DNA of 64,000 nucleotides from Basidiobolus meristosporus CBS 931.73 (lineage: Eukaryota; Fungi; Basidiobolomycota). The translations under genes were made by a program, and so were the position numbers. The stretch lies in assembly GCA_002104905.1 (NCBI GenBank), contig MCFE01000017.1, forward strand, positions 124,001 to 188,000. The letters run 5' to 3'. Each line of letters starts with the position of its first letter. Position 1 is the stretch's first letter. Under the pieces are notes generated by a model. The model saw only the letters and a program-made list of their open reading frames with translations, did not search any database and was not told where the DNA came from. This document shows, piece after piece, positions 39,182 through 44,197 of the stretch.

Positions 39182-40301
39182 CTAGTAGTAGACTTTGAGG
39201 GAAGTTCTAATTGGCGCCCTACACAGAGGGCAATCCCGGATCTCCAGGGTGCATTGAGCACAAGTGTGGAAGTGGCCGCAGTCCTGAAGGATGGTATCCC
39301 GCTTCTTTGTTAGGCATATTATACACATCTCGGGGTCGTACTCACTGGATATAGTGCCTTTACGTGCTTTTACTATCTTTCGCAACATCATTCGCTCGCT
39401 CCATGATTTGTATTTCGACACTATGTAGGGATACGCTCTTCTACCAATCAAAAGCCCCAAAATGGCTGCGGAGGTCATGGATATCCACCAGAATATTCTG
39501 GCTGTGTTTGCCTGTCCATGTAGGAACTTTTTGAAGCTTTCTCGAGTCAAAATAAAGGGAAGCTTAGGATCATCCGGGGGAACCAAATCCAATATCATAT
39601 CGTTGGAGGAGCTCTGTGCTGATAACTGACCAAGAACTGTCAAAGAGCTTCCAACAGGGAGGATTTTGTGTGTAGTCTGAATACCAATGGGCTTTTCACC
39701 CTGAAGATACTCCATAGCAGACTGGCCAAAACTGTTAGCTAAAGTTGGCTGAAATTGAGTGTTGAGGGGCTCTAGGCTTAGTTTGCTTGCTAGCAGCTCT
39801 ACATCAAACTCTGGAACATTAATGGACAGCCCATGCGGGATCTTGTTGATAATTCGGAAGGACACCCCACGAATCGCATTGTCGATATTTTCACTTTCGG
39901 TAACCCTACAAAGACACAATTGCTGGTCAGGTTTTGTGAGCGAGATGCAGTGCTGGAGCGATTTTTGATTACCAACGTAAGAAAAGATTGTCCCAACGTG
40001 AAAATACCCTGTCAACCGTTGTCTGGATTCCACGCATCAGAACGCACTAGGTTAATTTCTGGAAAACAAATCTCGAGGAGGGTTCTCTTACCTCCTGGAT
40101 GACCCCGATAATCTTTCCTGAGCTATTTTCTACCTCTATTTTATCTTGCAACAAAGCTACCTTCCCTTCAATCCTGACATAATCTCCTGGCACTGCTTCT
40201 TCCAGCGGTTTGGCCGATACAATGGAGGCTATTCTATCCAAAGACACTCGATATCCATAGTAAAACAAAGCTGAAACAACTGAAGTCAAAGCTATATCCA
40301 T
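39182..40301 (-). CDS. MUL1: GIDE-domain RING E3 ligase, MUL1/MAPL/SP1-like (3 exons)
   Basis: N-terminal TM, YVRIEGKV...GVIQ, GEKPIGIQTTHKILPVGSSLTVLGQL, second TM (FWWISMTSAAILGLLI), RING CIIC...DCGH..TC..C...CPLCR. Confidence 0.8.
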
Positions 40302-40552
40302 GTGGCTATGACAGCTTGGAGAATACTGAGGGAAGGTTGAGGAAATGATTTGGCACGATTTTCGAGCTCATCAAAATTAGCCACCAATGCAATGACTGAT
40401 TCGGAGATATATTCTGTATCTTTGACCATAATGGAACCAGAAATTATCAAGAACTCCTTAGAAAAGCTTTGTACATTAAAAATTAAATGGAAGCGGGTAA
40501 GATAGTAAAGCAACAAAATCGAACTACACACAATATAAATATCATCCACATA

Positions 40553-43254
40553 TCAAGCCATTTCGAAGTAGCGCTTGGTCTCCCAATCAGTAATTGATTG
40601 CTCCCATAGTTTCCATTCCTGCAGCCTGGTGCTTCCGTAGTGATCCACGAATCCATCCCCAAGGACCTCTCTTGCAATGCTTCCATGCTCCAGCATCTTC
40701 TGGGTAGCTTCAAGCAGCGACTTTGGAAATTTCTCGGCTCTAGAATCGTTGACAATGACGCCCACGCTAGGGGGGATGGGGATGGCCTGTTTATTCTTTA
40801 TCCCCCACATACCGCAGCCGAGTAGAGCACCAAGTGCCAAATGCGGGTTCATATCAGCCCCTGAAATTCGCTAAAAACAAACATGACTAAGTGTCCGGAT
40901 GAAAAGTAGGCTCGACCGCAACTTACCACTTCCAAACGGGTGGATTCTGCGTCAGCTTGTGAACTGACAATCCTAACTGCGCTGTTTCTATTTTCAAATC
41001 CCCAGGATACTACTGCAGGGGTCCATGTGTTTTCACCAAGCCTTTTGTAGCTATAAAAGTGACCGAATGGTCAATGCGTTGCGACATGAGTATCCATACC
41101 GACTCGCACATACCTGTTCACATATGGGGCCAATATGGGCAAGATACTTGGCAGTCCGCGAAGTAGTCCAGCAACGAACCAATTCATCACCTGGCTCATA
41201 TCCTCCAAACCATCCCTCGGAGGCTCGCGCATCCCAACCTCATTGCGTCTGGAAAAGATATTTTTGGCTGATCGGATGTCCTTGAGAGATATATGCATTC
41301 GTGCTGAGCATCCAGGCATATTCTCCTTGGGTTTGGCCATGAATGAAGCCATTACTCCGTGGCGTATGCTTATCTGCTTTACAGCAACCTTGAAAAGCTG
41401 TGCTCGATCACCCATGGCTAATGCAGAGCCGTATTGCAGTGCGCCTTGGTAAAGACCTGGGCCTGAATTATACATCACAATATCAATTTAGTTGCAATCT
41501 TGGAGATCAAGTGTAAAGTGGTTGATGCATACCAATCTCGGTACAAAGGCTTTCCAAAGGACAATCAAAGTTTTGCAGCATCTGGAACAACTCGTTGAAG
41601 TAGACCTTCTTTTCATGCGATCCCTCCAGCGCTGTATTGAACAGGTCAGAAGTGAGGGGATCAGTCTTGAAATTCTTCTCTCGTAGTGTAAATGGTGTTT
41701 CTGTTCAACAATGAGAAAAATGACCGGTCCTGTAGAAGGGATTTCTCTACCGACCTTTGTAATTGTACCATTCATACTTGACGCCACATAACGGCTCGAA
41801 ACCCATCGAGTGATATTCGTGCACAACCTTGCCCAAGATCTGACGTGGACAAACGCTAACAGGCTGACCTTCCTTGGTGAAAAATCGAACGAGAAAAAAT
41901 GGGAGATTCTCCTCCCATGGAATCCGCCGAAAGGTGCCGATGTCTACTTTTGCGACAAGATAACTGTATCCTTTACGTTTTGAGGTTGGCTGAGTGTGTA
42001 GAAATAAGTGGGGAGTGGACAGAACGCAAACCTCCTATCTCGGGACCCAGCGAGGATGCTTCACGTTCGCTCCAGCCAAATATAGAGCCACTAAACCCTG
42101 CTCGGAAAAGTTAGGCTCAAGAAGTGATCGCGCGAGAAAACACTTATATCTCACCAAAGCCGTCGTAGAGCATAGACAGGAATTTTGTTTTCACCATGAT
42201 CTTTTCGCGTAAGACACCGTTGATATCAATTCCAGCGACCTTGACGCGTTCATCGCCCTTGAGGAGCTCGTTGACTCTTTGGACTTCCAACGGGTCATAA
42301 GAAACCGAAGACAGCAGTGGCTCAAACTAGCGGAACAAAAGCGGAACAGTTACAGCAAAATCCATTAGGCTAAACCAGCAATGCAGTTCAATCAAATCCA
42401 GTCACGAACCTCATCATATCTCGCAGGCTTCAGCCTTTTGGACATCGGGATTGGTGAAGAAACGGGTGGGTACTGGTGAGCATGAATAGATGGCGATACC
42501 GAATTAGGATGTTGATTAGGGTAATGGAATGCTGAGGGTTCAACTGGTAGCGGATCAGTTGACCCAGCCGCTTCATGATACGGTAGGTTTCGTGACATGT
42601 AGGATGAATGTAGATTCTGTAGCTTAACCTCACTATGCGAGGATTCACTTTTCCCTTGAGGCGTATGAGGAACTAAAAGTTTATGAGGAGTATGCGGTGA
42701 ATTTACAACGTGCGGTTCGTGCAAGGATGCTGAGTGATGCGTAATTTGCGATGCATGCGAACTTTCGGCCGCAGGAGAAGATTGCCCTCTACTCTCTTTT
42801 GCGGGACTCTCTGCACTTTCATCCTTCCCCTCTCTAAGCAACCTTGCTGAGTACCATTGCATATCGTCGTGAAACGGAAAAGGCGCGCCGTTGTAGCCGG
42901 GCTGAAGCGTTTCCTGGAAGGACGGGTTAATAAATGAGCCACGTTTCTCGGGTCGCTGAGTCTAGTCTGGTGGTTGTCCTGAAACACACGCATACCCTAT
43001 CCAAGCGCCTTATGGGAAGCTCGTACCTTAAATTTCTGCAGCAGGTTCTTCCACTTTATTTTGCACTCAAGCATAGTTCTATGGAAGCCAGCAACCTGCA
43101 GCCGCTCAGCCACTTTTTGCCACTGCTCATCGACTATTCGTTTTTTCGTGTAGAAGAAAAGGTCGTCAAGCTCTCTACGGATTTCAATCAATTTTTTGGT
43201 CTCAGGAGGCTTCCATATCCCGCGGCCAGCTTTTTCGCCGGTATTTAACAACAT
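40553..43254 (-). CDS. Trihelix (Myb/SANT-like) DNA-binding domain fused to a degenerate glutamine synthetase type I-like domain, 714 aa; exons 43254-43027, 42913-42410, 42326-42155, 42097-42032, 41970-41755, 41700-41533, 41462-41114, 41050-40927, 40870-40553
   Basis: Eight GT-AG introns of 54-113 nt give 2145 nt = 715 codons including the stop, with no internal stop. N-terminus WKPPETKKLIEIRRE...QWQKVAERL..GFHRTMLECKIKWKNLLQKFK|ETLQ...FPFHDDM. C-terminus KVAGIDINGVLREK, TFRRIPW, CPRQIL, ASFMAKP, SYKRL, SWGFENRNSAVR, RLEVRISGADMNPHLA, DWETKRYFEM. Confidence 0.85.
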
Positions 43255-43690
43255 TGGGGTGGAAAATACGCGGTTCTGCGCAGGAATTTCTTCACCTCTG
43301 CGTACTGAAGAATGACCAGGCGTAAATCACAATTGAAGAAAACTTCCCGAGTAATGGATTTAGGCCGCTTATAAAGCGGAGTGCCTTTGGATTGAAAGTA
43401 GGATTTCCTCAGTCTCGAATCGAATCCATCAACGATTTTTTTCCCTGCTCCAGTAGAGGTGCACACGGATAAGTTTTAATCAAATGCGTTACGCCAACCA
43501 TTCTGAGCATTTGCTTTTGGAAAATCTAGCTGAACAGAAACTTCCCGATTCCTTGACCCCGGCTGGATTAGGAAAATAAGTCACGAATGCACAGGCAGAT
43601 ACATAACCACAGATACAATCCAAATCAACCGAGGATTCAAGGACCACGATCAGCCAGGAAGGAATGCGCATCCATCACTCCAAGCAATCG

Positions 43691-43730
43691 CGAGGATAGG
43701 TGAAGATTGGTGAGGATTGGTGAGGATAGG
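43691..43730. repeat. Four tandem 10-bp units (tgaggattgg consensus) containing two CCAAT boxes on the minus strand, upstream of the trihelix-GS gene
   Basis: cgaggatagg tgaagattgg tgaggattgg tgaggatagg. Confidence 0.7.
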
Positions 43731-44197
43731 CAATAAACTTTTCCGCTGATTTCTGACATCCCGATCATAGCTGATATCGCGAAATCACTGGCATTGTGTG
43801 GCCCGATGTCATACCGGGATATTTACGCCTAAAACCTATGAATGGATCTCAATCACAGCTCAGATTGAAAATCAATGATGACGCATGCCAGGTGGCTGAA
43901 ATACGGTGTGGCTTAAATAAACTTACAACCATCGTTGCCCATCACCCATCATCCATCGCCCATCACCTATCGGCTATCTGTACCAAGATAGGAAGGGGGT
44001 CGTTTCTGGTTCACTAGCAAAGCCTAGAACGCGTTTAAATAATTAATTTAAGACATCTACCCAGTGCGTCAACACCGGGCTAGATGTGTCTACATGTCCC
44101 TTTCGCTTGAATCCTAGCTTTATTGGAATTCAATAGCGGTGGTAATCTATATACAGACTGATTTGTCACCCCTCTGAGTTTCGTCATCTCGTCTGGA

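What the first reader, a model, noticed from the sequence alone, without database searches (positions are those of the whole stretch)
40553..43254. Trihelix DNA-binding domain fused to a glutamine-synthetase-fold domain: candidate metabolite-sensing transcription factor
Seen: fragments the ORF track lists separately splice through eight canonical introns (54-113 nt) into one 714-aa ORF. Exon 1 and the start of exon 2 form a trihelix/GT-1 Myb-SANT-like domain, including the family's (W/F)P(Y/F)xDxM tail, which appears only if the 43026-42914 intron is removed. A 150-aa S/P/H-rich linker with an NLS-like SKRLKP follows, then an in-frame phase-0 intron (RYDE|FEPL) joins it to a complete GS-I-like domain; no separate start was evident for the GS part. 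Established: GS moonlights as a regulator (B. subtilis GS with TnrA/GlnR), and GS-like fusions such as fungal FluG and plant NodGS pair it with an amidohydrolase, not a DNA-binding domain. Inference: a one-component regulator in which a GS fold senses glutamate, glutamine, nucleotide or a polyamine and may oligomerise the DNA-binding domain. I do not know a described protein with this architecture.
Basis: partly seen in the sequence, partly recalled or inferred. Interest (0 to 1): 0.92.

Follow-up and report, generated by a model that had tools for sequence, protein, structure and literature searches.

The report
Trihelix DNA-binding domain fused to dead glutamine-synthetase fold
The fungus Basidiobolus has an expressed gene that joins a plant-type (trihelix) DNA-binding domain to a complete glutamine-synthetase-like domain lacking key catalytic residues; it looks like a gene regulator built from a retired enzyme, but its function is untested.

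Summary
Eight GT..AG introns (113, 83, 57, 61, 54, 70, 63, 56 nt) join nine minus-strand exons (43254-40553) into a 714-aa ORF. It is identical to the deposited Basidiobolus meristosporus CBS 931.73 model P0151. Residues 13-95 match Myb_DNA-bind_4 and Arabidopsis GT-1. Residues 105-244 are predicted disordered, S/P/H-rich, with one conserved KRLK. Residues 245-714 form a complete GS-I fold.

One cDNA-like contig in a public run lacks all eight introns, including the in-frame RYDE|FEPL junction, and starts about 60 nt before the first ATG. That contig also runs into the next gene, so an extra GS-only isoform from Met233 is not excluded.

The same fused, intact ORF exists in the syntenic B. ranarum orthologue and in a B. 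meristosporus paralogue, which the annotators split into two genes. Synonymous sites are saturated, yet dN is low in all three parts. No other GS homologue found carries a DNA-binding domain.

The GS domain has K, Q and R at three metal-ligand positions that are invariant or nearly so in 96 homologues. It sits on a long stem branch. I read it as a probable pseudoenzyme used for ligand binding and/or oligomerisation, which is an inference.

The scan already held notes on this stretch (s1-202371) and on a possible paralogue (s1-202253).

The parts
43255..43320 (-). 5' UTR; the cDNA-like contig ends at about 43313-43320; no upstream ATG
43027..43254 (-). exon 1 (aa 1-76): start codon and helices 1-3 of the trihelix domain (W14, W45, W68; CKIKWKNLL motif)
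42914..43026 (-). intron 1, 113 nt, GT..AG, removed in the RNA contig
42410..42913 (-). exon 2 (aa 77-244): tail of the trihelix domain (to aa 95, window 42857), then the disordered S/P/H-rich linker
42428..42439 (-). KRLK (aa 235-238), the only K(K/R)x(K/R) NLS-like motif, identical in all three copies; Met233 lies two codons upstream
42327..42409 (-). intron 2, 83 nt, phase 0, the fusion junction (RYDE|FEPL); removed in the RNA contig; donor and acceptor conserved in the orthologue (207 nt) and paralogue (279 nt)
40553..42326 (-). exons 3-9 with introns 3-8: complete GS-I-like domain (aa 245-714; beta-grasp about 271-354, Gln-synt_C 363-710) and stop codon 40555-40553
41777..41779 (-). codon K388, at the position of metal ligand E129 (E in 96 of 96 homologues)
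41446..41448 (-). codon Q457, at the position of metal ligand E220 (E in 96 of 96 homologues)
41299..41301 (-). codon R506, at the position of metal ligand H269 (H in 94 of 96 homologues)
42069..42071 (-). codon S311, in the FGWD loop of the beta-grasp domain (D in 82 of 96 homologues; candidate D50 equivalent, mapping uncertain)

Best explanation
This is a real, expressed, Basidiobolus-specific gene for one 714-aa polypeptide. It has an N-terminal trihelix (GT-1-type Myb/SANT-like) DNA-binding domain. A roughly 140-aa disordered S/P/H-rich linker follows, ending in a conserved KRLK nuclear-localisation-like motif. The C-terminus is a complete GS-I-type glutamine-synthetase-like domain of the gamma-glutamyl-amine-ligase-like fungal subfamily.

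The likely origin (inferred) is that an upstream trihelix gene came to splice into the very start of a neighbouring stand-alone GS-like gene. The spacer between them became phase-0 intron 2.

The GS-like domain then lost two of the three n2 metal ligands (E129K, H269R), one n1 ligand (E220Q) and a conserved loop Asp. It kept the substrate and phosphate-binding arginines and H271.

The most likely working (inferred, not shown) is a nuclear DNA-binding regulator. Its GS-like domain would no longer ligate but would provide ligand binding (an anionic nitrogen metabolite or nucleotide) and/or GS-type ring oligomerisation, so that several trihelix domains act together.

My confidence that the fused polypeptide is the main functional product is about 0.88. 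My confidence that the GS domain is catalytically dead is about 0.7. My confidence that it acts as a regulator through sensing and/or oligomerisation is about 0.55.
For: Shown here:
- The spliced ORF equals the deposited model P0151.
- Run X3 holds one intron-free contig of 3556 nt at word depth 231.6. All eight junctions are exactly as modelled. Its 5' end is about 60 nt upstream of the first ATG, and no contig covers intron 2. The DNA run X1 keeps the introns.
- The 5' UTR has no uATG.
- Intact fused ORFs of 713 and 714 aa, with all eight intron positions and GT..AG kept, occur in the syntenic B. ranarum orthologue L001 and the paralogue L002.
- dS is saturated while dN is 0.04-0.06 (trihelix), 0.17-0.29 (linker) and 0.07-0.095 (GS).
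- Read-through of intron 2 gives three unrelated tails, so there is no conserved stop for a trihelix-only protein.
- The independent B. ranarum annotation also splices linker to GS.
- The trihelix is supported by PF13837 at 54.3 bits against a cut-off of 27, by GT-1 2jmw at 4e-9 with the three Trp and CxxKWxNL aligned, and by Atlas model TM 0.78-0.81 to plant GT-1/GT-3b.
- The GS fold has pLDDT above 90 over 251-712 and TM by target 0.88-0.91 to whole GS-I chains.
- Active-site columns are K/Q/R where 96, 96 and 94 of 96 homologues have E/E/H (also visible against 11zs).
- The Basidiobolus stem branch is 1.04 against 0.17-0.35 for other fungal lineages, with short branches inside the clade.
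- Exon 3 begins 26 aa before the RVKVAG strand, where stand-alone homologues have their own N-termini (23-27 aa).
Against: The RNA evidence is one assembled contig, not reads. That same contig runs on through a 250-nt spacer into the downstream RING-finger gene, so contig continuity alone does not prove a single mRNA.

A GS-only isoform starting at conserved Met233 is invisible to this evidence. An intron-2-retaining tip could have been clipped by the assembler.

JGI split the paralogue into a 251-aa trihelix gene and a 460-aa GS gene.

The N-terminal domain is modelled with low confidence (pLDDT 50-62).

No experiment shows DNA binding, ligand binding, oligomerisation, nuclear localisation or loss of activity. 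Residue numbering (E129 and the rest) rests on motif alignment and textbook knowledge of enteric GS, not on a direct alignment to that structure. The D50 equivalence is uncertain.
Confidence: 0.6

Rival explanations
1. There are two products rather than a fusion. One is a trihelix-only protein made by intron-2 retention or an alternative acceptor. The other is a GS-like protein translated from Met233 on a transcript that starts inside exon 2. The 714-aa ORF would then be a minor or artefactual reading.
For: JGI annotated the paralogue this way (P0245 ends ...TRFEE+ILFKVHT; P0152 has 460 aa). Met233 is conserved. The RNA contig demonstrably merges neighbouring genes.
Against: No contig in the RNA run covers intron 2. 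The read-through tails and stops are not conserved among the three copies. P0152 starts at a Met that is Val or Ile in the other two copies, and it removes residues conserved with homologues. Exons 1-2 are under strong purifying selection yet have no conserved stop outside the fused frame. GS homology begins at exon 3, so the 12 residues after Met233 are not needed as an ancestral leader. A separate annotation of B. ranarum joins linker and GS.
Confidence: 0.1
2. The fusion is real, but the GS-like domain is only an oligomerisation or structural scaffold, as lengsin is a GS-I-derived structural protein. It would multimerise the trihelix domains and sense nothing.
For: Three metal ligands are lost. 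The full GS-I fold, which normally builds rings, is kept at high confidence. From my own knowledge, lengsin is a catalytically inactive GS-I relative that forms dodecamers.
Against: The pocket arginines (R321, R339, R344, R359 equivalents), H271, E131, E212 and E357 are all kept in three anciently diverged copies. That suggests the pocket still binds something. A scaffold-only role would not need them.
Confidence: 0.2
3. The fusion is real and the GS-like domain is still a ligase with altered chemistry, with K and R replacing the n2 metal. The trihelix domain would tether it to chromatin or DNA, for example to gamma-glutamylate an amine locally.
For: Most substrate-binding residues and three metal ligands are retained. 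Relatives are ligases for diverse amines: IpuC, GlnA4, PuuA and 1-naphthylamine GS. Enzyme-trihelix fusions exist, such as the plant RNase J cluster with PF13837.
Against: E129 and E220 are invariant in all 96 homologues and H269 in 94, including every characterised relative. By established GS mechanism, both metal sites are needed for phosphoryl transfer.
Confidence: 0.1

Closest known systems
Plant trihelix (GT-factor) transcription factors, e.g. Arabidopsis GT-1 (PDB 2jmw/2ebi), GT-3b
   Same: The N-terminal domain matches PF13837 above threshold and aligns to the GT-1 DNA-binding domain with the three Trp and the CxxKWxNLLxxFK helix-3 motif. The predicted fold matches GT-1 and GT-3b.
   Different: This is a fungal protein. 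It has no GT-1 C-terminal ubiquitin-like or coiled-coil parts and carries a 470-aa GS-like domain instead. Its DNA target is unknown.
Stand-alone eukaryotic GS-I-like proteins (Dictyostelium 'type-1 glutamine synthetase 2' P0C7B6; unnamed 450-530-aa proteins of Mortierellomycota, Mucoromycota, Zoopagales, Kickxellales, Glomeromycota)
   Same: These are the nearest relatives of the C-terminal domain, at 44-49% identity. The Basidiobolus trio nests inside the fungal clade, so descent looks vertical.
   Different: They have no N-terminal DNA-binding domain. All keep E129, E220 and H269. The Basidiobolus branch is three to six times longer.
Bacterial gamma-glutamyl-amine ligases (PuuA, GlnA3/GlnA4, IpuC, GmaS, 1-naphthylamine GS) and GS-I proper
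   Same: They share the same two-domain fold (TM by target 0.81-0.91), the same Arg/His substrate pocket, and W or F at the flap position in place of E327.
   Different: Those are active enzymes with all six metal ligands. This domain has K, Q and R at three of them.
FluG (Aspergillus) and NodGS (plants): GS-I-like fusions
   Same: A eukaryotic GS-I-like domain is fused to another domain and linked to signalling or development rather than bulk nitrogen assimilation (own knowledge).
   Different: Their partner is an amidohydrolase. Here residues 1-250 have no hit except Myb/SANT families.
Lengsin (vertebrate lens GS-I-like pseudoenzyme)
   Same: A eukaryotic GS-I-derived protein that has lost catalytic residues and been re-used for a non-enzymatic role (own knowledge).
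   Different: It has no DNA-binding domain and a structural role. Relationship to this clade was not tested here.
B. subtilis GS with TnrA/GlnR, and bacterial 'trigger enzymes' with built-in DNA-binding domains (PutA, BirA)
   Same: In concept, a GS or enzyme fold couples metabolite state to transcription. PDB neighbours include GS-GlnR peptide complexes.
   Different: In Bacillus the enzyme and the transcription factor are separate, active proteins acting in trans. PutA and BirA are active enzymes. Here the link is covalent, eukaryotic, and the enzyme part looks dead. Yeast Gal3, an inactive galactokinase paralogue acting as a sensor in trans, is the nearest eukaryotic analogy (own knowledge).

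Membership tests
Trihelix / GT-factor DNA-binding domain (Pfam Myb_DNA-bind_4, PF13837) | Profile match above Pfam's gathering score over the whole domain | tested here: met
   54.3 bits against a cut-off of 27, E 1.9e-14, residues 13-95, profile 3-87 of 89
Trihelix / GT-factor DNA-binding domain (Pfam Myb_DNA-bind_4, PF13837) | Three regularly spaced Trp, one per helix, and the helix-3 CxxKWxNL motif | tested here: met
   W14, W45 and W68 and CKIKWKNLLQKFK align to Arabidopsis GT-1 2jmw, E 4e-9; identical in all three copies
Trihelix / GT-factor DNA-binding domain (Pfam Myb_DNA-bind_4, PF13837) | Three-helix-bundle fold like GT-1 | tested here: inconclusive
   The Atlas model of residues 1-105 matches GT-1 and GT-3b clusters at TM 0.78-0.81. 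My AF2 model gives helices 19-54, 57-79 and 91-108 at only pLDDT 50-62.
Trihelix / GT-factor DNA-binding domain (Pfam Myb_DNA-bind_4, PF13837) | Sequence-specific DNA binding | not testable with these tools
   Needs DAP-seq, PBM or EMSA
GS-I-type glutamine synthetase / gamma-glutamyl-amine ligase | Complete Gln-synt_C catalytic domain plus N-terminal beta-grasp domain | tested here: met
   PF00120 covers 363-710, profile 2-344 of 344, E 3.4e-67. The model of 251-712 has pLDDT above 90. TM by target is 0.88-0.91 to whole GS-I chains.
GS-I-type glutamine synthetase / gamma-glutamyl-amine ligase | Six metal ligands (E129, E131, E212, E220, H269, E357; enteric GS numbering) | tested here: not met
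   K388, Q457 and R506 replace E129, E220 and H269. Among 96 homologues these columns are E 96, E 96 and H 94. E131, E212 and E357 are kept.
GS-I-type glutamine synthetase / gamma-glutamyl-amine ligase | Conserved Asp of the beta-grasp loop (candidate D50, deprotonates the amine) | tested here: not met
   S/G/G in the three Basidiobolus copies against D in 82 of 96 homologues. The equivalence to D50 is by motif only.
GS-I-type glutamine synthetase / gamma-glutamyl-amine ligase | Substrate and phosphate-binding residues H271, R321, R339, R344, R359 | tested here: met
   All are retained in the three copies
GS-I-type glutamine synthetase / gamma-glutamyl-amine ligase | ATP-dependent ligase activity; ring oligomer | not testable with these tools
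   Needs an enzyme assay and SEC-MALS or cryo-EM
FluG / NodGS-type fusion | N-terminal amidohydrolase domain joined to a GS-I-like domain | tested here: not met
   No amidohydrolase hit. Residues 1-250 give only Myb/SANT families.
One-polypeptide regulator (DNA-binding domain plus enzyme-derived sensor domain) | Both domains in one translated polypeptide | tested here: met
   Spliced RNA contig; conserved fused ORF at three loci. The caveat is contig-level RNA evidence only.
One-polypeptide regulator (DNA-binding domain plus enzyme-derived sensor domain) | Ligand-dependent change in DNA binding or transcription | not testable with these tools
   Needs binding assays and ChIP or RNA-seq under changed nitrogen supply

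The most novel reading that the evidence does not exclude
This is a eukaryotic one-component metabolite-sensing transcription factor. A ring-forming pseudo-glutamine-synthetase has lysine and arginine in place of the n2 metal. It binds a nitrogen-status ligand (glutamate, glutamine, nucleotide or polyamine) without turning it over, and thereby switches the DNA binding of up to a dozen tethered trihelix domains. That would be a covalent, eukaryotic counterpart of the Bacillus GS-TnrA/GlnR circuit.
Probability: 0.3. Interest if true: 0.8.

Novelty: new variant of a known kind. Interest (0 to 1): 0.62.

Why it matters
Transcription factors with a built-in enzyme-derived sensor are common in bacteria and rare in eukaryotes. 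Here the birth of one can be read step by step:
- Stand-alone, catalytically intact GS-like genes occur in all sampled neighbouring fungal lineages.
- A fusion through a new phase-0 intron occurs in Basidiobolus only.
- There was a burst of change that removed metal ligands, followed by long conservation in two paralogues and two species.

If the GS-like domain senses a nitrogen metabolite, this would be a simple, testable eukaryotic link between nitrogen status and transcription. It would also be a clean case of an enzyme turning into a regulatory domain.

There is a practical point too. The paralogue is probably mis-annotated as two genes, and the B. ranarum model lacks exon 1.

Tried and rejected
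- RNA runs: a search with the whole gene listed none. A second search with one part listed runs labelled 'DNA?', and X3 among them behaves as cDNA. X4 and X5 held nothing. Read-level data could not be obtained, and read laying allows only one call. The paralogue's splicing and any internal start site therefore stay untested.
- Fusions elsewhere: I looked among GS homologues with N-terminal extensions (P0147, P0061, P0092, P0126, P0066, P0029, P0006). None has a DNA-binding domain.
- Relatives of the trihelix-plus-linker half: only the paralogue's split model P0245 was found.
- Met233 as the ancestral GS start with an old intron after it: Podila has no early intron, and homologues' N-termini line up with the start of exon 3. 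I rejected that idea. The Thamnocephalis gene model was too messy to use.
- Assembly chimera: rejected. A 9.3-kb DNA contig of run X1 and two other loci have the same arrangement.
- Literature: no paper links trihelix or Myb_DNA-bind_4 with a GS domain or with Basidiobolus GS. The lengsin/pseudoenzyme search gave nothing specific.
Full report
**Observation.**
On the minus strand, nine exons from 43254 to 40553 are separated by eight GT..AG introns of 113, 83, 57, 61, 54, 70, 63 and 56 nt. They give a 2145-nt CDS and a 714-aa product. This product is identical to P0151, the deposited model named 'glutamine synthetase/guanido kinase [Basidiobolus meristosporus CBS 931.73]'. P0151 already carries the precomputed Pfam domains PF13837 and PF00120. 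My literature searches found no paper that discusses it.

**Domains.**
- Exon 1 alone matches Myb_DNA-bind_4 at 1.2e-13. In the spliced protein the match covers residues 13-95 and profile positions 3-87 of 89, at 54.3 bits against a cut-off of 27.
- Residues 13-79 align to the solved Arabidopsis GT-1 DNA-binding domain (2jmw, E 4e-9). W14, W45, W68 and the CxxKWxNLLxxFK motif are in register.
- The ESM Atlas model of residues 1-105 matches plant GT-1 and GT-3b clusters at TM 0.78-0.81. My own AF2 model gives three helices there, but only at pLDDT 50-62 because the alignment is shallow.
- Residues 105-244 are predicted disordered, with pLDDT about 33. Residues 96-244 are 41% S+P+H and hold seven S/T-P sites. 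KRLK at 235-238 is the only K(K/R)x(K/R) motif in the protein.
- Residues 251-712 are modelled at pLDDT mostly above 90 as a full GS-I fold, with the beta-grasp domain and the catalytic domain.
- Gln-synt_C covers 363-710. Foldseek gives TM by target of 0.88-0.91 to whole GS-I chains.
- The nearest reviewed proteins are Dictyostelium type-1 GS 2 (33% identity), IpuC, GlnA4 and PuuA.

**Is it one transcript?**
The first search listed no RNA run. A second search listed runs of guessed kind 'DNA?'. When laid on 40100-43800, run X3 gave one contig of 3556 nt at word depth 231.6.
- That contig skips exactly the eight modelled introns (CT..AC on the plus strand).
- It ends about 60 nt upstream of the ATG at 43254.
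- It leaves intron 2 uncovered.
- Run X1, from the source sample, keeps all introns.

X3 therefore behaves as cDNA. It differs from the window at two bases. One is synonymous (Leu265) and one lies in the 3' UTR. The 5' UTR has no upstream ATG, so a transcript starting there would be translated into the fusion.

The caveat is real. The same contig continues through the 250-nt spacer into the downstream RING-finger gene, so the assembler merges overlapping transcripts. Continuity alone does not prove one mRNA. What is directly shown is that exon 2's end is spliced in frame to exon 3. A transcript starting inside exon 2 and translated from Met233 cannot be excluded as an additional isoform.

**Comparative evidence closes most of that gap.**
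- The exhaustive search with exon 7 found only one close cluster, represented by P0001. P0001 is a 620-aa B. ranarum model that starts at the Met inside exon 2 and already joins linker to GS.
- Its locus L001 is collinear with the window over about 12 kb. It holds the missed exon 1 upstream.
- B. meristosporus has a paralogous locus, L002. There JGI called a 251-aa Myb_DNA-bind_4 gene and a 460-aa GS gene side by side.
- Projecting the window's exon boundaries onto both loci gives intact fused ORFs of 713 and 714 aa. All eight introns sit at the same positions with GT..AG. Intron 2 is 207 and 279 nt long and still phase 0.
- Synonymous sites are saturated in all pairs. dN is 0.04-0.06 in the trihelix, 0.17-0.29 in the linker and 0.07-0.095 in the GS part. 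Between the window copy and B. ranarum, dN/dS is 0.023 overall and 0.118 in the linker.
- Reading through intron 2 gives three unrelated short tails. Exons 1-2, which are strongly constrained, thus have no conserved stop except the one at the end of the GS domain.
- The split paralogue models look like prediction artefacts. P0245 uses the same donor and an internal acceptor to reach a stop. P0152 starts at a Met that is Val or Ile in the other copies, and it differs at intron 4.

I put the fused polypeptide as the main functional product at about 0.88.

**Distribution and origin.**
All other homologues retrieved are 404-533-aa GS-only proteins. They come from Mortierellomycota, Mucoromycota, Glomeromycota, Zoopagales, Kickxellales, Dikarya and Dictyostelia. 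Homologues with N-terminal extensions carry no DNA-binding domain. The trihelix-plus-linker half finds only the paralogue.

In a tree, the three Basidiobolus sequences form a clade inside the fungal group. The window copy is sister to B. ranarum (support 97) and the paralogue lies outside them. The fusion therefore predates both the duplication and the species split. The clade's stem is 1.04 substitutions per site, against 0.17-0.35 for other fungal lineages, and its internal branches are short.

Exon 3 begins 26 residues before the first GS strand. That is where stand-alone homologues have their own N-termini, and Podila has no early intron. My inference is that the former spacer between a trihelix gene and a GS-like gene became intron 2.

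**Catalytic state.**
I aligned the three Basidiobolus proteins with 96 homologues and read the columns of the classical GS motifs.
- The position of E129 is K (E in 96 of 96 homologues).
- The position of E220 is Q (E in 96 of 96).
- The position of H269 is R (H in 94 of 96).
- The Asp of the FGWD loop is S or G (D in 82 of 96).
- E131, E212, E357, H271, R321, R339, R344 and R359 are kept.

The same differences are visible against the Brucella GS-like structure 11zs. The numbering is the enteric GS convention applied by motif (established knowledge). The D50 equivalence is uncertain.

Losing two of three n2 ligands and one n1 ligand argues against ATP-dependent ligation. The kept arginine and histidine pocket, with K and R where the metal sat, argues that an anionic ligand may still bind.

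**Mechanism.**
The following are shown:
- The domain content.
- In-frame splicing of intron 2.
- Conservation of the fused ORF.
- The replaced ligands.

The following are inferred:
- A nuclear regulator that binds DNA through the trihelix domain.
- A GS-like domain that provides ligand sensing and/or ring oligomerisation.
- A phosphorylatable linker.

The rivals are two separate products (0.1), a scaffold-only GS domain (0.2) and a still-active chromatin-tethered ligase (0.1).

**Comparison and novelty.**
This protein is a member of the trihelix domain family by sequence. By fold it is a member of the GS-I-like family, but it fails the metal-ligand criterion for an active enzyme.
- It is not a FluG/NodGS-type fusion, because it has no amidohydrolase.
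- It resembles lengsin as a GS-I pseudoenzyme.
- In concept it resembles Bacillus GS-TnrA/GlnR, PutA/BirA-type regulators and yeast Gal3.
- Trihelix-enzyme fusions exist elsewhere, such as the plant RNase J cluster and a chordate P5CR cluster.
- None of my searches found a trihelix joined to a GS domain outside Basidiobolus.

I class it as a new variant of a known kind. It is lineage-restricted and functionally untested, and I score its interest at 0.62.

Noticed in passing
window 39182-40552 (minus strand): The cDNA-like contig of run X3 continues from the fusion gene's stop through a 250-nt spacer into the downstream GIDE/RING-finger (MUL1-like) gene. Its length of 3556 nt fits both genes together. 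Either the UTRs overlap or there is read-through transcription.
   Followed up: partly
L002:4844-7726 (B. meristosporus MCFE01000078.1) and L001:5602-8464 (B. ranarum JASJQH010006890.1): Public annotations look incomplete. The paralogue is split into P0245 (251 aa) and P0152 (460 aa). The B. ranarum model P0001 lacks exon 1. Both loci support intact fused ORFs of 714 and 713 aa.
   Followed up: yes
window 43456-43800 (plus strand): A low-depth cDNA contig (24.3) with a GT..AG intron at about 43457-43527 marks a divergently transcribed neighbour upstream of the fusion gene. The shared promoter region is only about 150-200 nt.
   Followed up: no
proteins P0002 (4424 aa), P0024 (2757 aa), P0106 (1356 aa): These giant proteins hold six, three and three tandem complete GS units (Gln-synt_N plus Gln-synt_C in P0002 and P0024). 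They turned up among hits to exon 7. Their source organisms are unknown.
   Followed up: partly
protein P0074 (1434 aa): An SH3/WW/RasGEF protein has a partial Gln-synt_C segment at its C-terminus. This is another non-enzymatic-looking reuse of a GS piece, or a chimeric gene model.
   Followed up: no
ESM Atlas clusters: Other Myb_DNA-bind_4-enzyme architectures exist. One is a plant RNase J cluster (RMMBL + RNase_J_C + PF13837). Another is a chordate cluster named pyrroline-5-carboxylate reductase, in which 96% of members carry PF13837.
   Followed up: no
window 40536 and 42264: The cDNA-like run (organism label B) differs from the window at two bases: T>A in the 3' UTR and G>A, which is synonymous at Leu265. 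This points to strain or allele differences rather than editing, but no matched DNA was available.
   Followed up: partly
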